From positions 6,377 through 70,376 of the forward strand of contig NW_019218122.1 of NCBI RefSeq assembly GCF_002571385.2: a stretch of 64,000 nt of DNA, written 5' to 3'. The first letter of the stretch is position 1, and every line of letters begins with the position of its first letter. The notes beneath the pieces are model-generated. The model saw only the letters and a program-made list of their open reading frames with translations, ran no database searches and was not told the origin of the DNA. The DNA comes from Stylophora pistillata (Eukaryota). This document shows, one piece after another, positions 1 through 6,134 of the stretch. The translations under genes and the position numbers were made by a program.

Positions 1-429
1 TCATTTATTTCGAAGAATAAATAGCTTGTGATTCTCGAGCTAATGAATCGTTGTCCTTTCATACCGTCAAGTCAGGCGCTACGGAGATATAAATCCGATT
101 GCTCGCATAAACAATGAACAAACAAACAAATCAAAACAATCAAATCAAATACGTATTCCCCCACTCCTTTCAAATTTCTCCTTTGGATGTGCTGTGCACC
201 GGCAGTTACGTTTTTGATAGATGGAAATGAGACATACTCACGTCATGTGTCCTTTCGAGAGAGGGATGTGGAATCGTTTCCCGATCATTGGCTCCTTATC
301 GCGCCTAAGACTTGATTAAAACTGAGGGATACCCTGTCATCTGATTGAGGGATGCCCACCTTATCATCTGCAACTAAGAAACAATGGAGGTGCTACTATC
401 ACCGTAATTTTCATAAATTTCACGCAAAC

Positions 430-1060
430 AGATAGATAGCTTTATTAAAAAATCCATTGCAGCCAAAAGGCTGAATTACGGACTGTACAAATGTTTACTT
501 AATACAAAATATAAAAAGAATGAAAAACTAATTAAAAAAAGGCTAAAAATACTGCATATGTATATATATTAAAATTCATGTACGAAAGAGCAAAAATACT
601 ATTGATATATATTATATATATTATACGTAGTGAAATTTAAGGAATAGACGCATTATACGTGATAAAGCCATTTGGAAATAGCCGCGTTGTACATGATAAA
701 ATTATTCTTTAGTCTATTTGTTCTGCAGAAAGGTACGTTAAAAGCGCGCTTTTTCCTTAAGGCTATGGTACTAAGATTACATGACGGCAAAAGGCCATGT
801 AATTTGTGGCAGCTGTTGTCTTTGATCTCACTGAATAGGCGCTCCGTCAGCAATTGGCCCCGTTGGTAGAGGGTGGCAATATTGCACTCTTTAAGAGCTT
901 CTTGGTAATGGAAAAATTATTCTAAGTGCGCGGCGCTGAATTTTCTCTAGCTCTTCAGAGAGATACTGTGGTAGACCATTGTGGAAAACTTGGCAAGCAT
1001 ATTCAGACACGGGCCGGATACATGTAGTATAGAAACAAACTAGCTGCGCAGGATCTCGTA
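430..1060 (-). mobile_element. 3' fragment of an L2/CR1-group LINE (region C-terminal to RT)
   Basis: ORF 891-1214 contains YTTCIRPVSEYACQVFHNGLPQYLSEELEKIQRRALRIIFP, typical of L2/CR1/Crack ORF2 C-termini. The minus strand ends in AATAAA followed by a short (CTAT)n tail near 430-446. Confidence 0.8.
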
Positions 1061-1684
1061 TCGTTTTCCGATCTAAAATTCGTACAATGGCATAAGAGCT
1101 GTCATGCCCCCTAACCATTAAGTAGCCCTCCGAAAACTGCACATTTACATGAGGTACACACACTACAAGGGAAATTAGTAAGTAGCCATCAACTTGAGTA
1201 GGAACTATAAACAACTTCTATGCCAACGGTGATGGGGTCGTTAAAGCTTAGGGAAAATCCCCAAATTTAACTGTAAATATACTTTTTATGAATTTCGAAA
1301 ATGGCATATTCAAGTAATTAGAAAGAAGAACTGCGAGAGCGACACCGCAATAGAAAGCCTCCAATTGCGTTTTCTTTGAGTTTTTAAACTGATGGTTCTT
1401 AAATGCCAGAGACAAGTGCTAGAAATTTATGACATGAAACGTCTAAGCACTTTAAACTATCGTTGGTTAACAAATTAAGTCACACGAGACGAGGAAGCAT
1501 CAGCTTACGGAATCGCTAAGAATGGCAGTGTCCCTTGCCATTCATCTTGTTTTCAGTTCGCAGCTTCATTTCCCTTTCAAAAAGCTGTTTTCAGCCCTAT
1601 TAGCAAGGAAAACAATGAAAACACCGGAAAAATAAGCAAACATTGTTTCGTCGTGTGCTCTGATTGCCCGGCTGACAGCAATCG

Positions 1685-1862
1685 CGAGAGTCACGGCACA
1701 GCCATGGGTACCAAAGTGGCCCCTTCCTTTCCTAACCTTTGTTTGGGTCTTTTCGAAGCTAATACTTTGAAAAATGCCCCATTTCAACAACACACTTGGT
1801 TTAGATACATCGACGATATTTTTATGATCTGGACCGAAGGTTTAGATAACCTGAAAATATTC
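1685..1862 (+). mobile_element. Penelope-like element reverse transcriptase fragment, cut by an assembly gap
   Basis: Translation HGTAMGTKVAPSFPNLCLGLFE...WFRYIDDIFMIWTEG shows the PLE RT motifs GxAMG and RYIDDIF. Confidence 0.85.
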
Positions 1863-1873
1863 NNNNNNNNNNN
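1863..1873. other. assembly gap (N run)
   Basis: 11 N characters. Confidence 1.
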
Positions 1874-2273
1874 TCCACGGTTGCTTGCTGAACATTTCAC
1901 AGTTGAAATAGTGACTGACTTCGCGACAAACTTGGCGGAAGTCATCATCAGAATCATGTCACACAAAGCTAAACAAAGAACATCAAACAAACATAACAAA
2001 AACAAGTCCAGCTCTTCCTCGATTTCACTTTATTGGGTCTTTGCAAAACTTACAATTATATAGGAGTCAACCTTTTCATGCATTACACTACCACAGCAAT
2101 TCGTAAAAATCAAACTTATCGATAATTTGATTCTATAATAAAAACGTTCATGAAAGGCAAACTTGTTAAAACATCAGGAAAAAGTCCAAAAAGGGGTAAT
2201 TATGCGAAATTAATTGTGTTCTATCTAACAGTTGACATTTTTGAACCAAGTGTTATGATCGCCCACTACAAAA

Positions 2274-3719
2274 TCAAGCTACGGTTTTAAAGGAGCTTTT
2301 GAACACGCAGGTGCATTCAGTGACTATAAAGTCTTTGAATTCCTGCAGAACAAAATTCCCAGTAGTTTCGTGCACCTTTAGGATATGCAGGCTCTTGAAG
2401 GCGGATGGCACACAGCAGTACTCTTCAGCCTTACTGTTGTTTTTGGCTAGGTAATATAGGTACTTAAGGTAACCATGGTTCGTGAAACGGCGAGGTCCAC
2501 CACTTAAGGGAGAATCGCATTTGCCGTCTCAGTCGTAGGCATTGAAGGTGATTGGCTGGAGTATCATCCCATCAGGAAATTGACGGGTCTCGATGTGAAA
2601 ATCTCGTCTTGAGCAAGCCAGCTTCTGAGCAGTAGAACGGGATACGATTTGCTGCTCTGATGAACGTCGGTTTCTGCAAAACAATGAAATAGTTATTTTA
2701 GTCAAAAATGTTATTTTTGAAGAAAAACTTGAAGAGATAAACAAGTCTGGGTGGGGCTTCTAATAATCTCCAATACAAGTGTACTCAACTTAAATTTTGG
2801 ATTTTAAGATGTTAATGGATTAAAACAAGAGCAAGATAGAACAAAACATATCAAATCAAAGCTATTCCACTTTGACGAGTCGAACCGATGGGCACTTTTA
2901 AAAGAGGATTTTTTCCAGCCTACCAATGGACCGTTGCCTTCAACGTGAGGGGAAATTGATTTAACTAACACACCTTTCAGCATGGAGGTCGGATACTAAG
3001 TGATCTTCTCTAATAATCACCATCAGCGGTAGGGCAAACTTTCTAATGGTGTTTTCCCTGGGGAACTTTGTAGGATCGGCCGTCTGGTAGACTGCTTTGA
3101 AACTATGGTCGCTTTCAGGGTGTTGAAGCCAGTGGCGCGCGATTTCCGTAACGTCCAACACGATTACGTTTCGGGTAAAACCTGGAATCGCTCTGGCCTG
3201 AGCAACCATCTTCTTGGTCATCGCATCGTAAAAAGACAAGAAAAATGGATGCCCATAGGGAGCTGGGTTGATCATTTCCAGATATATCATAGCCTTAGTG
3301 CGGTCTAGCTTGTCAGCTCGTCTATGATAATGGCGGAGGTCGAAACGAACGACGTTGGAATCGCGAGTAGCTGAAAAACCAAAGAAAAAAGTATTACCCA
3401 TACTTGTGTTTTTGAGGGTAGCTCGTCAAACACGGTTAATGCTATGAAAGACACAAGAATGCGTGGGAAAATATTTTCAAAAGAGTCCATAGAAGTAAAA
3501 AGAAAATGAACAATTACCGTTTCCTTTAAGACATACGAAACCGTGGGGCTGTCCATGGTGCTCCTTGTAGATGGTTTCCAACATTTCATCTTCAACGCGC
3601 GCGTTTTTCTCGAAAAGAATGTTTTCAGGCTCGATATTTTCCTTAGTCACAAATTTAGCGTGTACAAGGAAAGTTGTTGTCGCAGCGAAAAACATCAGAA
3701 AGCTAGCTGAAGGATACAT
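2274..3719 (-). pseudogene. divergent TGF-beta/BMP-superfamily ligand gene, 3 exons, with one in-frame TGA at cystine-knot Cys2 (nonsense allele, base error or recoded codon)
   Basis: Exons 3719-3518, 3370-2974 and 2673-2274, GT-AG, phases consistent, 999 nt in total. Signal-peptide-like N-terminus MYPSASFLMFFAATTTFLVHA; prodomain motif LDVTEIARHWLQHPESDH; furin site RNRR; mature domain ACSRRDFHI...QPITFNAYD*DGKCDSP...NHGYL...YCCVPSAFKSLHIL...DFIVTECTCVFKSSFKTVA-stop. TGA at 2529-2531. AATAAA at 2029-2034 (minus). Confidence 0.85.
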
Positions 3720-4099
3720 CTTGTTGATACTGCTCTCCCCTTCACTGCGTTTCTCCGACAGGACAGTAGAAATGACGAGCAAGATTGCTTGCAACAACTT
3801 TTAACCATACGAAACTGATAACGATAAGAAAAACTGAGACACTATTATTTCCTGCGAGTTAGTGTGTCCAGGTCTAACAAAGATAAGCAATGCAATCTAT
3901 TTCAAGCGAAAAAAACTTCTAAAAACAAAAACATTTTCCCTTGAAGGGGATTGTTGACCCAACTCGAAAACTTGGGCAGACTAAACAAGTGAAACATAGG
4001 ACGAAAGACAACTGAACAATTTCATTTATCTTGAAGTAATCTTTGCTGGATCTTTAAAAATCCACCAGCGAAGTGTCGAGTAGTTAAACTCAATTTGGG

Positions 4100-4780
4100 A
4101 ACTAGACTGGATGGATTACCAATGTTACTGCGTACAGCGGTAACATTGTCGTAATCCAGTGTTACCAAATGTTAAAATAATTGGTACCAACACCCTGACC
4201 AAGGGGGTGGGTTAGCAGCTTGTTGAATCAAAAGCCCCGACAAAAGCATGAAATTTTACACCACCACATCGAAGCAGTTCCATTACTGCGCCCCTCTGGC
4301 AGCAAAAACAGATGCTGATAAGCGATTATGAATAATTAATGACGGGAATTGACATGGTCACTAAAAAGGACACCCTGACCAAGGGGGTGGGTTAGCAGCT
4401 TGTTGAATCAAAAGCCCCGACAAAAGCATGAAATTTTACACCACCACATCGAAGCAGTTACATTACTGCACCCCTCTGGCAGAAAACGGGAAGCTGATAA
4501 AGGGATTATGAGTAGTTAATGATGGGAATTGACAGTTTCTTATCAACATTCAAACGGGTCATTGTAAAGAACAAAAAAGCCGGCACTTGCACTTTTCAAT
4601 ACAGGTGGTTCATCGCACGCAACTTTTCGTTTGTTTATACCATGTAAGGAAATGTATTTGCTCCAAAGGAAGTTTTTATTATCTCATTGATCAACACCAC
4701 CTCCAAGTGAGCCGTGCTCTTTGCCAAATCTTTAACTGACGCGTAACCTTAGAACTTGTTGTTGTTGAGAGTATTCAAGG
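4100..4780. repeat. segment with a 180-bp tandem duplication (units start 4191 and 4371), paralogous to 7007-7400
   Basis: caccctgaccaagggggtgggttagcagc occurs at 4191 and 4371. The anchors actagatggattaccaatg, cccctctggcagcaaaaacagatgctgataagcg and ctcattgatcaac recur at 7007-7390. Confidence 0.85.
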
Positions 4781-6134
4781 TTACTTCCCACCTTCAGATG
4801 CCGAAAAAAAATGTTTTTTTCGTTTGTTTTACTAAATTCAAGTCAAAAATTTCACCTAACGTTTCGAAAAAAATCTAAAAACTGCAAAAGCGTTCAGTTA
4901 TTTAGGAAAACGCATTTTCAAATAAAAGTTACTAGATCAGGAAGGTGCCATAATCTCTTACCTGGGAGAGCCCCTAGGGGAATTTTCGCGGCAACCGCTC
5001 CTCTTCATATTAATTGCGCACAAATTCACACGTGGAAGCTTTTTACTTGTGGAAACATCTTTGCTCATGGAAAATTCAAAAGCAGAAAAAAGTCCCTGGG
5101 TAAAAAAAAAAAGGAAAAAATAGGCTAAAAGAAGAAAGAAGAGTACCATTCTGTCAAGAAGAGAAAAACATCATTGGTGAAAGCGACTGGGATTCCGCTC
5201 CACGCTAGCGTCCTGATTTCGAACAAAGAAGTCATGGTAAAATCAAAATCTTTCGTACATTAAGTTAAAACTAGGTTTCTTTTTATGTATGCAAGTACCA
5301 GCCTTCATACAAAAACATTTACAATCGCTTCAAATCGTAATTTTGAAAGCTGTCCGTGTCGATTCGTTGTCTTGCTTCTCGGCATATTTTTTGGTTTTTC
5401 CATTTTTACCGCGGGGTTTTAGTCTGCCTATTATTGTGTTGTCCTCCTCAAGGCTGCACTGAGCGATCGAGATATAAAAAAAACATGTCCGTAATGAGTT
5501 ACTTTTCCATTGGTTTGCGATTTCAGGAGGCGAGATAAATCTCCTGATGTGGCGCTGGTTGTTTACAAACCTTTTGGAGCTAAAATCTCGCATTTGATTG
5601 TGAGAGGAATACATACACTTTGAGCGAATTCAGAGGGTATGCAGATTTAACCAATTATCGTGAAATTTCGCTGAAAGATTCCAGGGATAATGACAAACGA
5701 AAGAGTGTTGGGATATTTTGATATTTAAATTTTTTTCCATGTCACGGTGGCGTCCATTTACGCAATACGTCTCGCATATTTTAGGCTTCTCTAACTTTAG
5801 ATCCGGATATCTAGACAACCTATCAGAATATCGGAAAATGAAGCCTGACACATTTGTTGATTGATTGCCTTGTGAATAAGACTGTGCAGCCATTTTGCTC
5901 GCGCTGCGGGATCCGATGCCCGATAAATTCAATAGAAGGACCCTCGGTCGTTTCACGCCTTTTTGGCTCCTGACATTTCCTAAATGAAAACATCACTTAT
6001 ATTATATTTTTTAACGTAAACCATATTTACTCACCTTTCTTCTTATGTGTAGTTTGTTAGGAATTTCTTTCAACTAGCGCGCGTACGAGTTTTTTCCGAA
6101 GGACACTCGCGAAGGAGTAAAGTAATATTATTTC

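What the first reader, a model, noticed from the sequence alone, without database searches (positions are those of the whole stretch)
2274..2673. TGF-beta-family ligand with UGA exactly at a cystine-knot cysteine: dead allele, or a recoded (Sec/readthrough) growth factor?
Seen: in the last exon the mature domain reads ...FNAYD-TGA-DGKC..., so the TGA (2529-2531) replaces the first Cys of the invariant CxGxC motif. The frame then stays open for 84 more codons with all six other cysteines in place (C, GKC, CC, CTC). Signal peptide, prodomain, RNRR furin site, splice sites and a poly(A) signal are intact. The ORF track misses this because it stops at the TGA. Established: UGA aligned to Cys is the classic signature of selenocysteine, and I know of no selenoprotein in the TGF-beta family. 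Inference: a single TGY>TGA change (recent null allele or consensus error) is more parsimonious, because I could not see a canonical SECIS in the ~250-nt 3' UTR. A last-exon stop would also escape EJC-dependent NMD and could yield a secreted prodomain-only product that might act as an antagonist.
Basis: partly seen in the sequence, partly recalled or inferred. Interest (0 to 1): 0.85.

Follow-up and report, generated by a model that had tools for sequence, protein, structure and literature searches.

The report
Assembly error in coral TGF-beta gene
The stop codon inside this coral growth-factor gene stands only in this assembly; DNA and RNA from four other studies read an ordinary cysteine codon, so the gene is intact and not recoded.

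Summary
A three-exon TGF-beta-family gene on the minus strand has TGA at 2531-2529, at the first Cys of CxGxC, and 84 open codons follow it.

The stop is not in nature as sampled. Two genomic and two spliced poly(A) RNA data sets from four studies all read A at + strand 2529, which gives TGT, Cys. The locus is single-copy. No SECIS was found. A paralogue and the seven database relatives that span the site have Cys there.

The TGA is one of 12 letters private to the window in 2.3 kb. Eight of them sit on sites that vary among the other samples (P about 3e-14). All 10 differences from the nearest haplotype in 2165-2589 are complement swaps (A/T, G/C). This looks like a consensus artefact at variable sites.

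An actin copy elsewhere in the genome shows the same TGT-to-TGA change. Five earlier, unchecked scan notes report in-frame stops in other intact genes of this genome.

Verdict: an ordinary, expressed, divergent 7-cysteine TGF-beta ligand. The stop is almost certainly an artefact, less likely a private allele of the reference colony. Interest is low.

The parts
3518..3719 (-). Exon 1 coding part: ATG at 3719-3717, a hydrophobic N-terminus that is a likely signal peptide, and the start of the prodomain.
   Evidence: It translates open for 67 codons plus 1 nt. RNA contigs X16 and X17 join 3518 to 3370.
3371..3517 (-). Intron 1 (147 nt, GT..AG).
   Evidence: Skipped in the spliced contigs of X16 and X17. 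Its ends read GTAATT..TTTCAG.
2974..3370 (-). Exon 2: prodomain.
   Evidence: The frame is open. It has a weak TGFb_propeptide match (E 0.17, below the cut-off). RNA contigs differ from the window at 0 letters here.
2674..2973 (-). Intron 2 (300 nt, GT..AG).
   Evidence: Skipped in X16 and X17. Its ends read GTGTGT..TTGCAG.
2274..2673 (-). Exon 3 coding part: the RNRR furin-type site (its first codon split across the splice junction), the mature 7-cysteine domain, a 10-residue tail after CTC, and the stop at 2276-2274.
2529..2531 (-). The codon in question. It is TGA in the window and TGT (Cys) in all four public data sets.
   Evidence: table 3: place 2529, T read as A at full depth in X1, X4, X16 and X17. 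Codon effect.
2018..2273 (-). 3' UTR with AATAAA at 2034-2029. It holds no SECIS.
   Evidence: RNA contig ends lie at 2018 and 2038. The Rfam scans are.
2165..2589 (.). A patch of window-private letters at 2165, 2193, 2206, 2457, 2505, 2529, 2566, 2569 and 2589. Place 2211 is also a complement swap against the nearest haplotype. This is the suspected consensus artefact.
   Evidence: table 3, (codon effects; statistics).

Best explanation
The locus is an intact, transcribed, three-exon gene for a divergent TGF-beta-superfamily ligand of the 7-cysteine (BMP/GDF/Nodal-like) type. By inference from the family, it is secreted as a pro-protein, cut at RNRR, folded into a cystine knot, dimerised through the fourth cysteine, and signals through type I/II serine/threonine kinase receptors. 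The in-frame TGA is not part of the gene. It is a wrong letter in this assembly's consensus. The true codon is TGT, and possibly TGT/TGC in the source colony. It is one of about ten single-letter complement swaps in a 425-nt patch. These swaps fall on positions that vary between haplotypes, as if variant letters had been written in from the wrong strand or an ambiguity had been resolved to a non-allele letter. The reads, the splicing, the single copy, the lack of a SECIS and the statistics of the private letters are shown. The step that produced the swaps and the ligand's mode of action are inferred.
For: Reads: at + strand 2529 all four runs read A, not T. X1 has depth 11.1 of 11.1, X4 96.6 of 96.6, X16 53.6 of 53.6 and X17 29.7 of 29.7. 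The X1 and X4 contigs run unbroken through both introns, so they are genomic. The X16 and X17 contigs skip both introns, so they are spliced mRNA. X1 and X4 split into two contigs where they are heterozygous (2087-2487) but not at 2529.
Copy number: there is one copy in the 398-Mb genome, so the reads do not come from a second locus.
Codon effects: the other window-private letters also damage codons that the reads show as ordinary. TTA stands for TTT, GAG for GAC/GAT, CTA for CTT/CTC, ATG for AAG/AGG and GGG for GCG/GAG. Relatives have E-K, N-R and D-R type residues where the window has G-M.
Statistics: 8 of 12 window-private letters fall on the 25 sites that vary among the other samples (hypergeometric P 2.6e-14). 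10 of 10 differences from the nearest haplotype in 2165-2589 are complement-type (P about 1e-7 at a 20% natural share).
Run index: the best of 20 holders has only 0.81 of the window's 31-letter words. That is about what these private letters would remove.
Second locus: an actin copy at G000:C234:333571-334338 has TGA where four paralogues have TGT. It also has CAT>CAA and GAT>GAA. 14 of its 15 private letters are at third codon positions, so it is a gene under constraint and not a decaying pseudogene.
Relatives: the paralogue and the seven database relatives that span the site have Cys there.
Against: The reads of the colony that was actually assembled could not be identified with certainty. 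X1 is the best DNA holder, but it differs from the window at 10 places in 1.7 kb, so a true private allele in the reference colony is not excluded. Logan contigs drop rare variants and show presence, not absence. The artefact mechanism is inferred from the pattern only, and the assembly pipeline was not examined. Conserved HSP70 genes show no internal stops, so any artefact is patchy, not general.
Confidence: 0.88

Rival explanations
1. The reference colony really carries a private TGY-to-TGA nonsense allele, heterozygous or homozygous. Its product would be truncated: a prodomain plus 44 residues of the mature region, with no cystine knot.
For: The window does read TGA. None of the four runs is proven to be the assembled colony. 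A last-exon stop would escape EJC-dependent nonsense-mediated decay (established knowledge).
Against: The allele is absent from 4 of 4 data sets of 4 studies. The TGA belongs to a cluster of private letters that are all complement swaps and mostly sit as a third letter on known two-allele sites, which real mutation does not produce. The same TGT-to-TGA change occurs in a constrained actin copy elsewhere. No indexed run holds more than 0.81 of the words.
Confidence: 0.1
2. UGA is decoded, either as selenocysteine at the knot position or by programmed readthrough, and gives a full-length recoded ligand.
For: UGA aligned with Cys is the classic selenoprotein signature. The genome has tRNA-Sec genes (77.8 bits, two loci). 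The frame is open for 84 codons after the TGA.
Against: The mRNA does not contain UGA, because both spliced poly(A) RNA contigs read UGU. No SECIS family match up to E 10 was found in 1-6000 or in a laxer scan of 1890-2700. No relative shows a stop at the site.
Confidence: 0.01
3. The runs read a second, intact paralogous copy, and the window copy is a pseudogene.
For: Reads were laid at 90% likeness or more, so a very close duplicate could in principle be laid here.
Against: Protein and DNA searches of the whole assembly find only this locus. The next hit has 27% identity. The genomic contigs match through the introns and upstream DNA at about 99.4%, with one contig at full depth.
Confidence: 0.01

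Closest known systems
BMP/GDF/Nodal-type ligands of the TGF-beta superfamily (Pfam PF00019; solved BMP6, BMP2, GDF5, BMP7)
   Same: It matches the TGF_beta domain. It has the seven-cysteine pattern with a single Cys before CxGxC, then CC, then CxC. A dibasic RNRR site precedes the mature domain, and a prodomain exon lies upstream. The best solved matches are BMP6, BMP2, a Nodal/BMP2 chimera and GDF5, at E about 1e-5. The NAY-C-G-C motif recalls Nodal and the Atlas lists 'Squint' second, but that is a lead only (plus my own recall).
   Different: It is very divergent. The best of 1.8 billion cluster representatives has 46% identity. A 10-residue tail follows the last CxC, where canonical ligands end one residue after it. 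At least six relatives share a tail of this kind. The prodomain does not reach the Pfam cut-off. No subfamily could be assigned.
Eukaryotic selenoproteins with Cys-containing homologues
   Same: In the window a UGA aligns with a conserved Cys, and the frame stays open downstream.
   Different: Transcripts carry UGU. There is no SECIS. There is no UGA in any relative.
Consensus errors at heterozygous sites in draft assemblies of highly polymorphic marine invertebrates
   Same: These are single-letter substitutions without indels, clustered in a patch and tied to polymorphic positions. They are absent from reads of other individuals.
   Different: The swaps are specifically complement-type (A/T, G/C). 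That points to a strand or ambiguity-code mix-up rather than ordinary miscalls. This was inferred and not traced to a tool.
Lefty (from memory, not tested)
   Same: It is a TGF-beta family member with residues extending beyond the last CxC.
   Different: As I recall, Lefty lacks the interchain cysteine. This protein keeps the CC pair.

Membership tests
TGF-beta superfamily ligand | Match to the TGF_beta domain profile above the curated cut-off | tested here: met
   the 84 aa after the TGA alone score 43.3 bits (cut-off 27) and cover profile positions 33-104 of 104.
TGF-beta superfamily ligand | Seven knot and interchain cysteines in the pattern C...CxGxC...CC...CxC | tested here: met
   The window has six plus the TGA. 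All four read sets give TGT at the seventh. Relatives align with Cys in each column.
TGF-beta superfamily ligand | Dibasic (furin-type) cleavage site between the prodomain and the mature domain | tested here: met
   RNRR lies across the exon 2/3 joint. Cleavage itself was not tested.
TGF-beta superfamily ligand | Signal peptide and a recognisable TGF-beta propeptide | tested here: inconclusive
   The N-terminus is hydrophobic by eye. The Pfam TGFb_propeptide match has E 0.17 and 12 bits, below the cut-off of 25.8. A relative's upstream ORF does hit PF00688.
TGF-beta superfamily ligand | C-terminus ending one residue after CxC | tested here: not met
   CTC is followed by 10 residues. A similar tail is seen in P0001, P0002, P0003, P0004, P0006 and P0009. 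This is a typical feature, not an absolute rule, so membership stands on the domain match.
TGF-beta superfamily ligand | Binding of type I/II receptor kinases and Smad signalling | not testable with these tools
   This needs a bench assay.
Selenoprotein (UGA read as Sec) | In-frame UGA present in the mRNA | tested here: not met
   Spliced poly(A) RNA contigs of two studies read UGU.
Selenoprotein (UGA read as Sec) | SECIS element in the 3' UTR | tested here: not met
   Rfam scans up to E 10 of 1-6000 and of 1890-2700, on both strands, gave no SECIS family.
Selenoprotein (UGA read as Sec) | UGA or Sec conserved at the site in relatives | tested here: not met
   The paralogue has TGT. The seven database relatives that span the site have Cys. 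Gene callers would, however, not report a read-through UGA.
Selenoprotein (UGA read as Sec) | Sec-decoding machinery in the genome | tested here: met
   There are two tRNA-Sec loci at 77.8 bits. This is necessary but not sufficient.
Segregating nonsense allele or pseudogene | The stop is seen in independent individuals, or there are signs of relaxed constraint | tested here: not met
   0 of 4 data sets carry it. Exons 1 and 2 are identical in the RNA contigs. The gene is spliced and polyadenylated.

The most novel reading that the evidence does not exclude
Two readings remain beyond 'artefact'. (a) The reference colony truly carries a private last-exon nonsense allele that yields a secreted prodomain-only product. 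(b) Independently of the stop, this gene belongs to a little-described cnidarian branch of TGF-beta ligands with a tail after the final CxC, so a free C-terminus that canonical ligands lack. Only (a) bears on the finding, and the probability given is for (a).
Probability: 0.08. Interest if true: 0.3.

Novelty: not a real feature. Interest (0 to 1): 0.1.

Why it matters
There is no recoded growth factor here, so the headline claim falls. The practical value is a warning. This assembly holds patches of single-letter complement swaps at variable sites, and these can turn TGY, TAY, CAY and GAY codons into stops or wrong residues without any frameshift. Five other first-stage notes on this genome describe in-frame stops in intact genes, and an actin copy shows the same TGT-to-TGA change. 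Such findings in this genome should be checked against reads before any recoding or pseudogene story is built on them. The gene itself is an expressed, divergent coral TGF-beta ligand with an unusual C-terminal tail, which is of modest interest for cnidarian signalling.

Tried and rejected
- Word-index protein search with the 84-aa piece found nothing in its length range of 46-147 aa. The same search with relative P0006 found only P0006 itself. Exons were searched apart.
- Exact look-up of the exon-2 ORF gave one 891-nt metagenome contig (L003). It stops at 2905 and does not reach the codon.
- A pattern scan of JGI metagenome contigs around the codon, with N at the third base, gave 0 hits.
- The HSP70 test for further in-frame stops gave two 'stops' that lie at the edge of the matches and are intron or boundary sequence. 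It adds no support, so the artefact is patchy.
- The idea that the patch is a gap-closing artefact, because an N run lies at 1863-1873, is not supported. The actin locus has no N within 3.5 kb.
- A fixed mapping of ambiguity codes to letters was rejected, because C/T sites appear as both G and A in the window.
- The bacterial promoter and terminator scan is irrelevant for a eukaryote. One translation was in the wrong frame and was redone.
- Literature searches (one search was malformed) gave nothing specific on this subfamily or on how the assembly was built.
- The Atlas search gave only TGF_beta clusters below the 0.9 score.

Full report
**What is in the window.** The minus strand from 2675 to 2274 reads RNRR, then a mature region with one Cys, then FNAYD, TGA, DGKC. 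It then runs open for 84 codons through CC and CTC to a stop at 2276-2274. The TGA is at 2531-2529, which is TCA on the + strand. The 84-residue piece after it alone matches Pfam TGF_beta positions 33-104 of 104 (E 6.7e-11, 43.3 bits against a cut-off of 27). It aligns with BMP6 starting at the residue after BMP6's first CxGxC cysteine.

**Gene model.** The exons were translated one by one and never joined for a search. Exon 1 (3719-3518) gives 67 open codons plus one base. Exon 2 (3370-2974) and exon 3 (2673-2274) are open apart from the TGA. The total is 999 nt with the stop. Both introns are GT..AG and AATAAA lies at 2034-2029.

**What the reads say.** Twenty public runs from ten studies hold the stretch, several of them labelled coral metagenome. 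I laid four runs from four studies.
- X1 and X4 give contigs that run unbroken through both introns and the upstream DNA, so they are genomic.
- X16 and X17 are poly(A) RNA libraries. Their contigs of 1312 and 1125 nt skip exactly 2674-2973 and 3371-3517 and end at 2018 and 2038, so they are spliced mRNA.
- In all four runs the letter at + strand 2529 is A at full depth, not T. The codon is therefore TGT, Cys.
- X1 and X4 split into two contigs where they are heterozygous (2087-2487). At 2529 they are single contigs whose depth equals the sum of the two haplotypes, so both individuals are homozygous for TGT.

**Not a second copy.** A protein search and a DNA search of the whole 398-Mb assembly find only this locus. 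The next hit is a paralogue with 27% identity on another contig. That paralogue reads FNAYN-C-VGKC and ends with the canonical CGCR.

**No recoding apparatus at the locus.** Rfam scans up to E 10 of 1-6000, and a laxer scan of 1890-2700, on both strands, return no SECIS family. The genome does have tRNA-Sec (two loci at 77.8 bits). Selenocysteine was therefore possible in principle, but the mRNA has no UGA to decode.

**Why I call it an artefact rather than a private allele.**
- In 1890-4200 the window has 12 letters that none of the four runs or the metagenome contig L003 share: 2165, 2193, 2206, 2457, 2505, 2529, 2566, 2569, 2589, 3463, 3770 and 3776.
- Eight of these 12 fall on the 25 sites that vary among the other samples, where the window shows a third letter. 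The hypergeometric P is 2.6e-14. Real mutation does not target sites that already have two alleles.
- Between 2165 and 2589 all ten differences from the nearest observed haplotype are complement swaps (G for C, T for A, A for T, C for G). The chance of that is about 1e-7 if such changes make up 20% of natural differences.
- The swaps spoil ordinary codons. The window has CTA for CTT/CTC, TTA for TTT, GAG for GAC/GAT, ATG for AAG/AGG, GGG for GCG/GAG, and TGA for TGT.
- Where the window has G-M, the reads have A-K or E-R. Relatives have E-K, N-R and D-R.
- Exons 1 and 2 show no difference from the RNA contigs, while exon 3 shows 14-15.
- The best holder in the run index has only 0.81 of the window's words, about what these private letters would remove. 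Apparently no indexed run carries them.
- The pattern fits variant letters written in from the wrong strand, or an ambiguity resolved to a non-allele letter. Under either, 2529 would be a TGT/TGC synonymous site in the source colony. That last step is inference.

**A second locus with the same fault.** Five earlier first-stage notes on this genome report in-frame stops in otherwise intact genes. They are unchecked, and I used them only as a lead. I searched the genome for actin and compared five copies. The copy at G000:C234:333571-334338 has TGA where the four others have TGT, CAA where they have CAT/CAC, and GAA where they have GAT/GAC. 14 of its 15 private letters are at third codon positions. 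That is the mark of a gene under purifying selection, so the stop and the two odd residues look like the same T-to-A fault at T/C sites. HSP70 genes show no internal stops; the two that were flagged lie at the edges of the matches. The fault is therefore patchy. It is not tied to assembly gaps.

**What the gene is.** It is a 332-codon pro-protein with a hydrophobic N-terminus, a prodomain with only a weak propeptide match, an RNRR site and a 7-cysteine mature domain.
- Its closest solved relatives are BMP6, BMP2, a Nodal/BMP2 chimera and GDF5, at E about 1e-5.
- A search of 1.8 billion cluster representatives gives 13 hits. The best has 46% identity.
- Several relatives share the NAY-C-G-K-C and DM(I/V)VTEC-C motifs and a tail after the last CxC.
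- One relative sits behind an ORF with a TGFb_propeptide hit on a 2-Mb contig.
- I could not place it in a named subfamily. The likeness to Nodal is a lead from motifs and an Atlas row.
- By inference from the family, it works as a furin-processed, disulfide-linked dimer that signals through receptor serine/threonine kinases.

**Verdict.** My odds are artefact about 0.88, real private allele of the reference colony about 0.10, and recoding or a second copy about 0.01 each. The finding is not a real biological feature and its interest is low. Its use is as a caution for other in-frame stops reported in this genome.

Noticed in passing
G000:C234:333571-334338 (L009), compared with L010-L013: An actin copy has an in-frame TGA where four paralogues have TGT. 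It also has CAT>CAA and GAT>GAA. 14 of its 15 private letters are at third codon positions. It looks like the same consensus fault as in the window.
   Followed up: partly
same genome, other windows (notes s1-773132, s1-771610, s1-773194, s1-773156, s1-773187): Five first-stage notes describe in-frame stops in intact genes, one of them a TAA at a Tyr codon. Given the fault seen here, they should be checked against reads first.
   Followed up: no
window 4190-4534: A 180-nt unit is duplicated in tandem about 500 nt upstream of the gene's ATG. The two parts of the copies are 97% and 89% alike.
   Followed up: partly
window 1653-2063 (+), across the N run at 1863-1873: A reverse-transcriptase fragment with a weak RVT_1 match and a YIDD-type motif abuts the gene's 3' end. 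In the runs, 1909-1952 continues into other contigs, so it is repeated DNA (tables 7 and 8).
   Followed up: partly
window 56885-57373 (-), beside the N run at 56552-56572: A second weak RVT_1 fragment.
   Followed up: no
window 58414-59616 (-): A 401-codon open exon with a MAP7 (E-MAP-115) domain, E 9.5e-12.
   Followed up: no
window 2694-2709 (intron 2): X4 and X17 lack 7 and 6 letters here relative to the window and X1. This is an ordinary intron indel polymorphism (table 4).
   Followed up: no
G000:C741:15026-15262 (L002 1513-1893, minus): The only paralogue found in the genome is a canonical 7-cysteine mature domain. It follows an RLRR site and ends CGCR.
   Followed up: partly
P0001-P0009; L005 3001-3516: A set of divergent TGF-beta domains from metagenome and Logan assemblies share a tail of up to about 55 residues after the last CxC. 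They may form a cnidarian subfamily that has not been described as such.
   Followed up: partly
G000:C8:264996-265081 and G000:C364:101777-101862: Two tRNA-Sec genes at 77.8 bits, so the coral has selenocysteine decoding.
   Followed up: no
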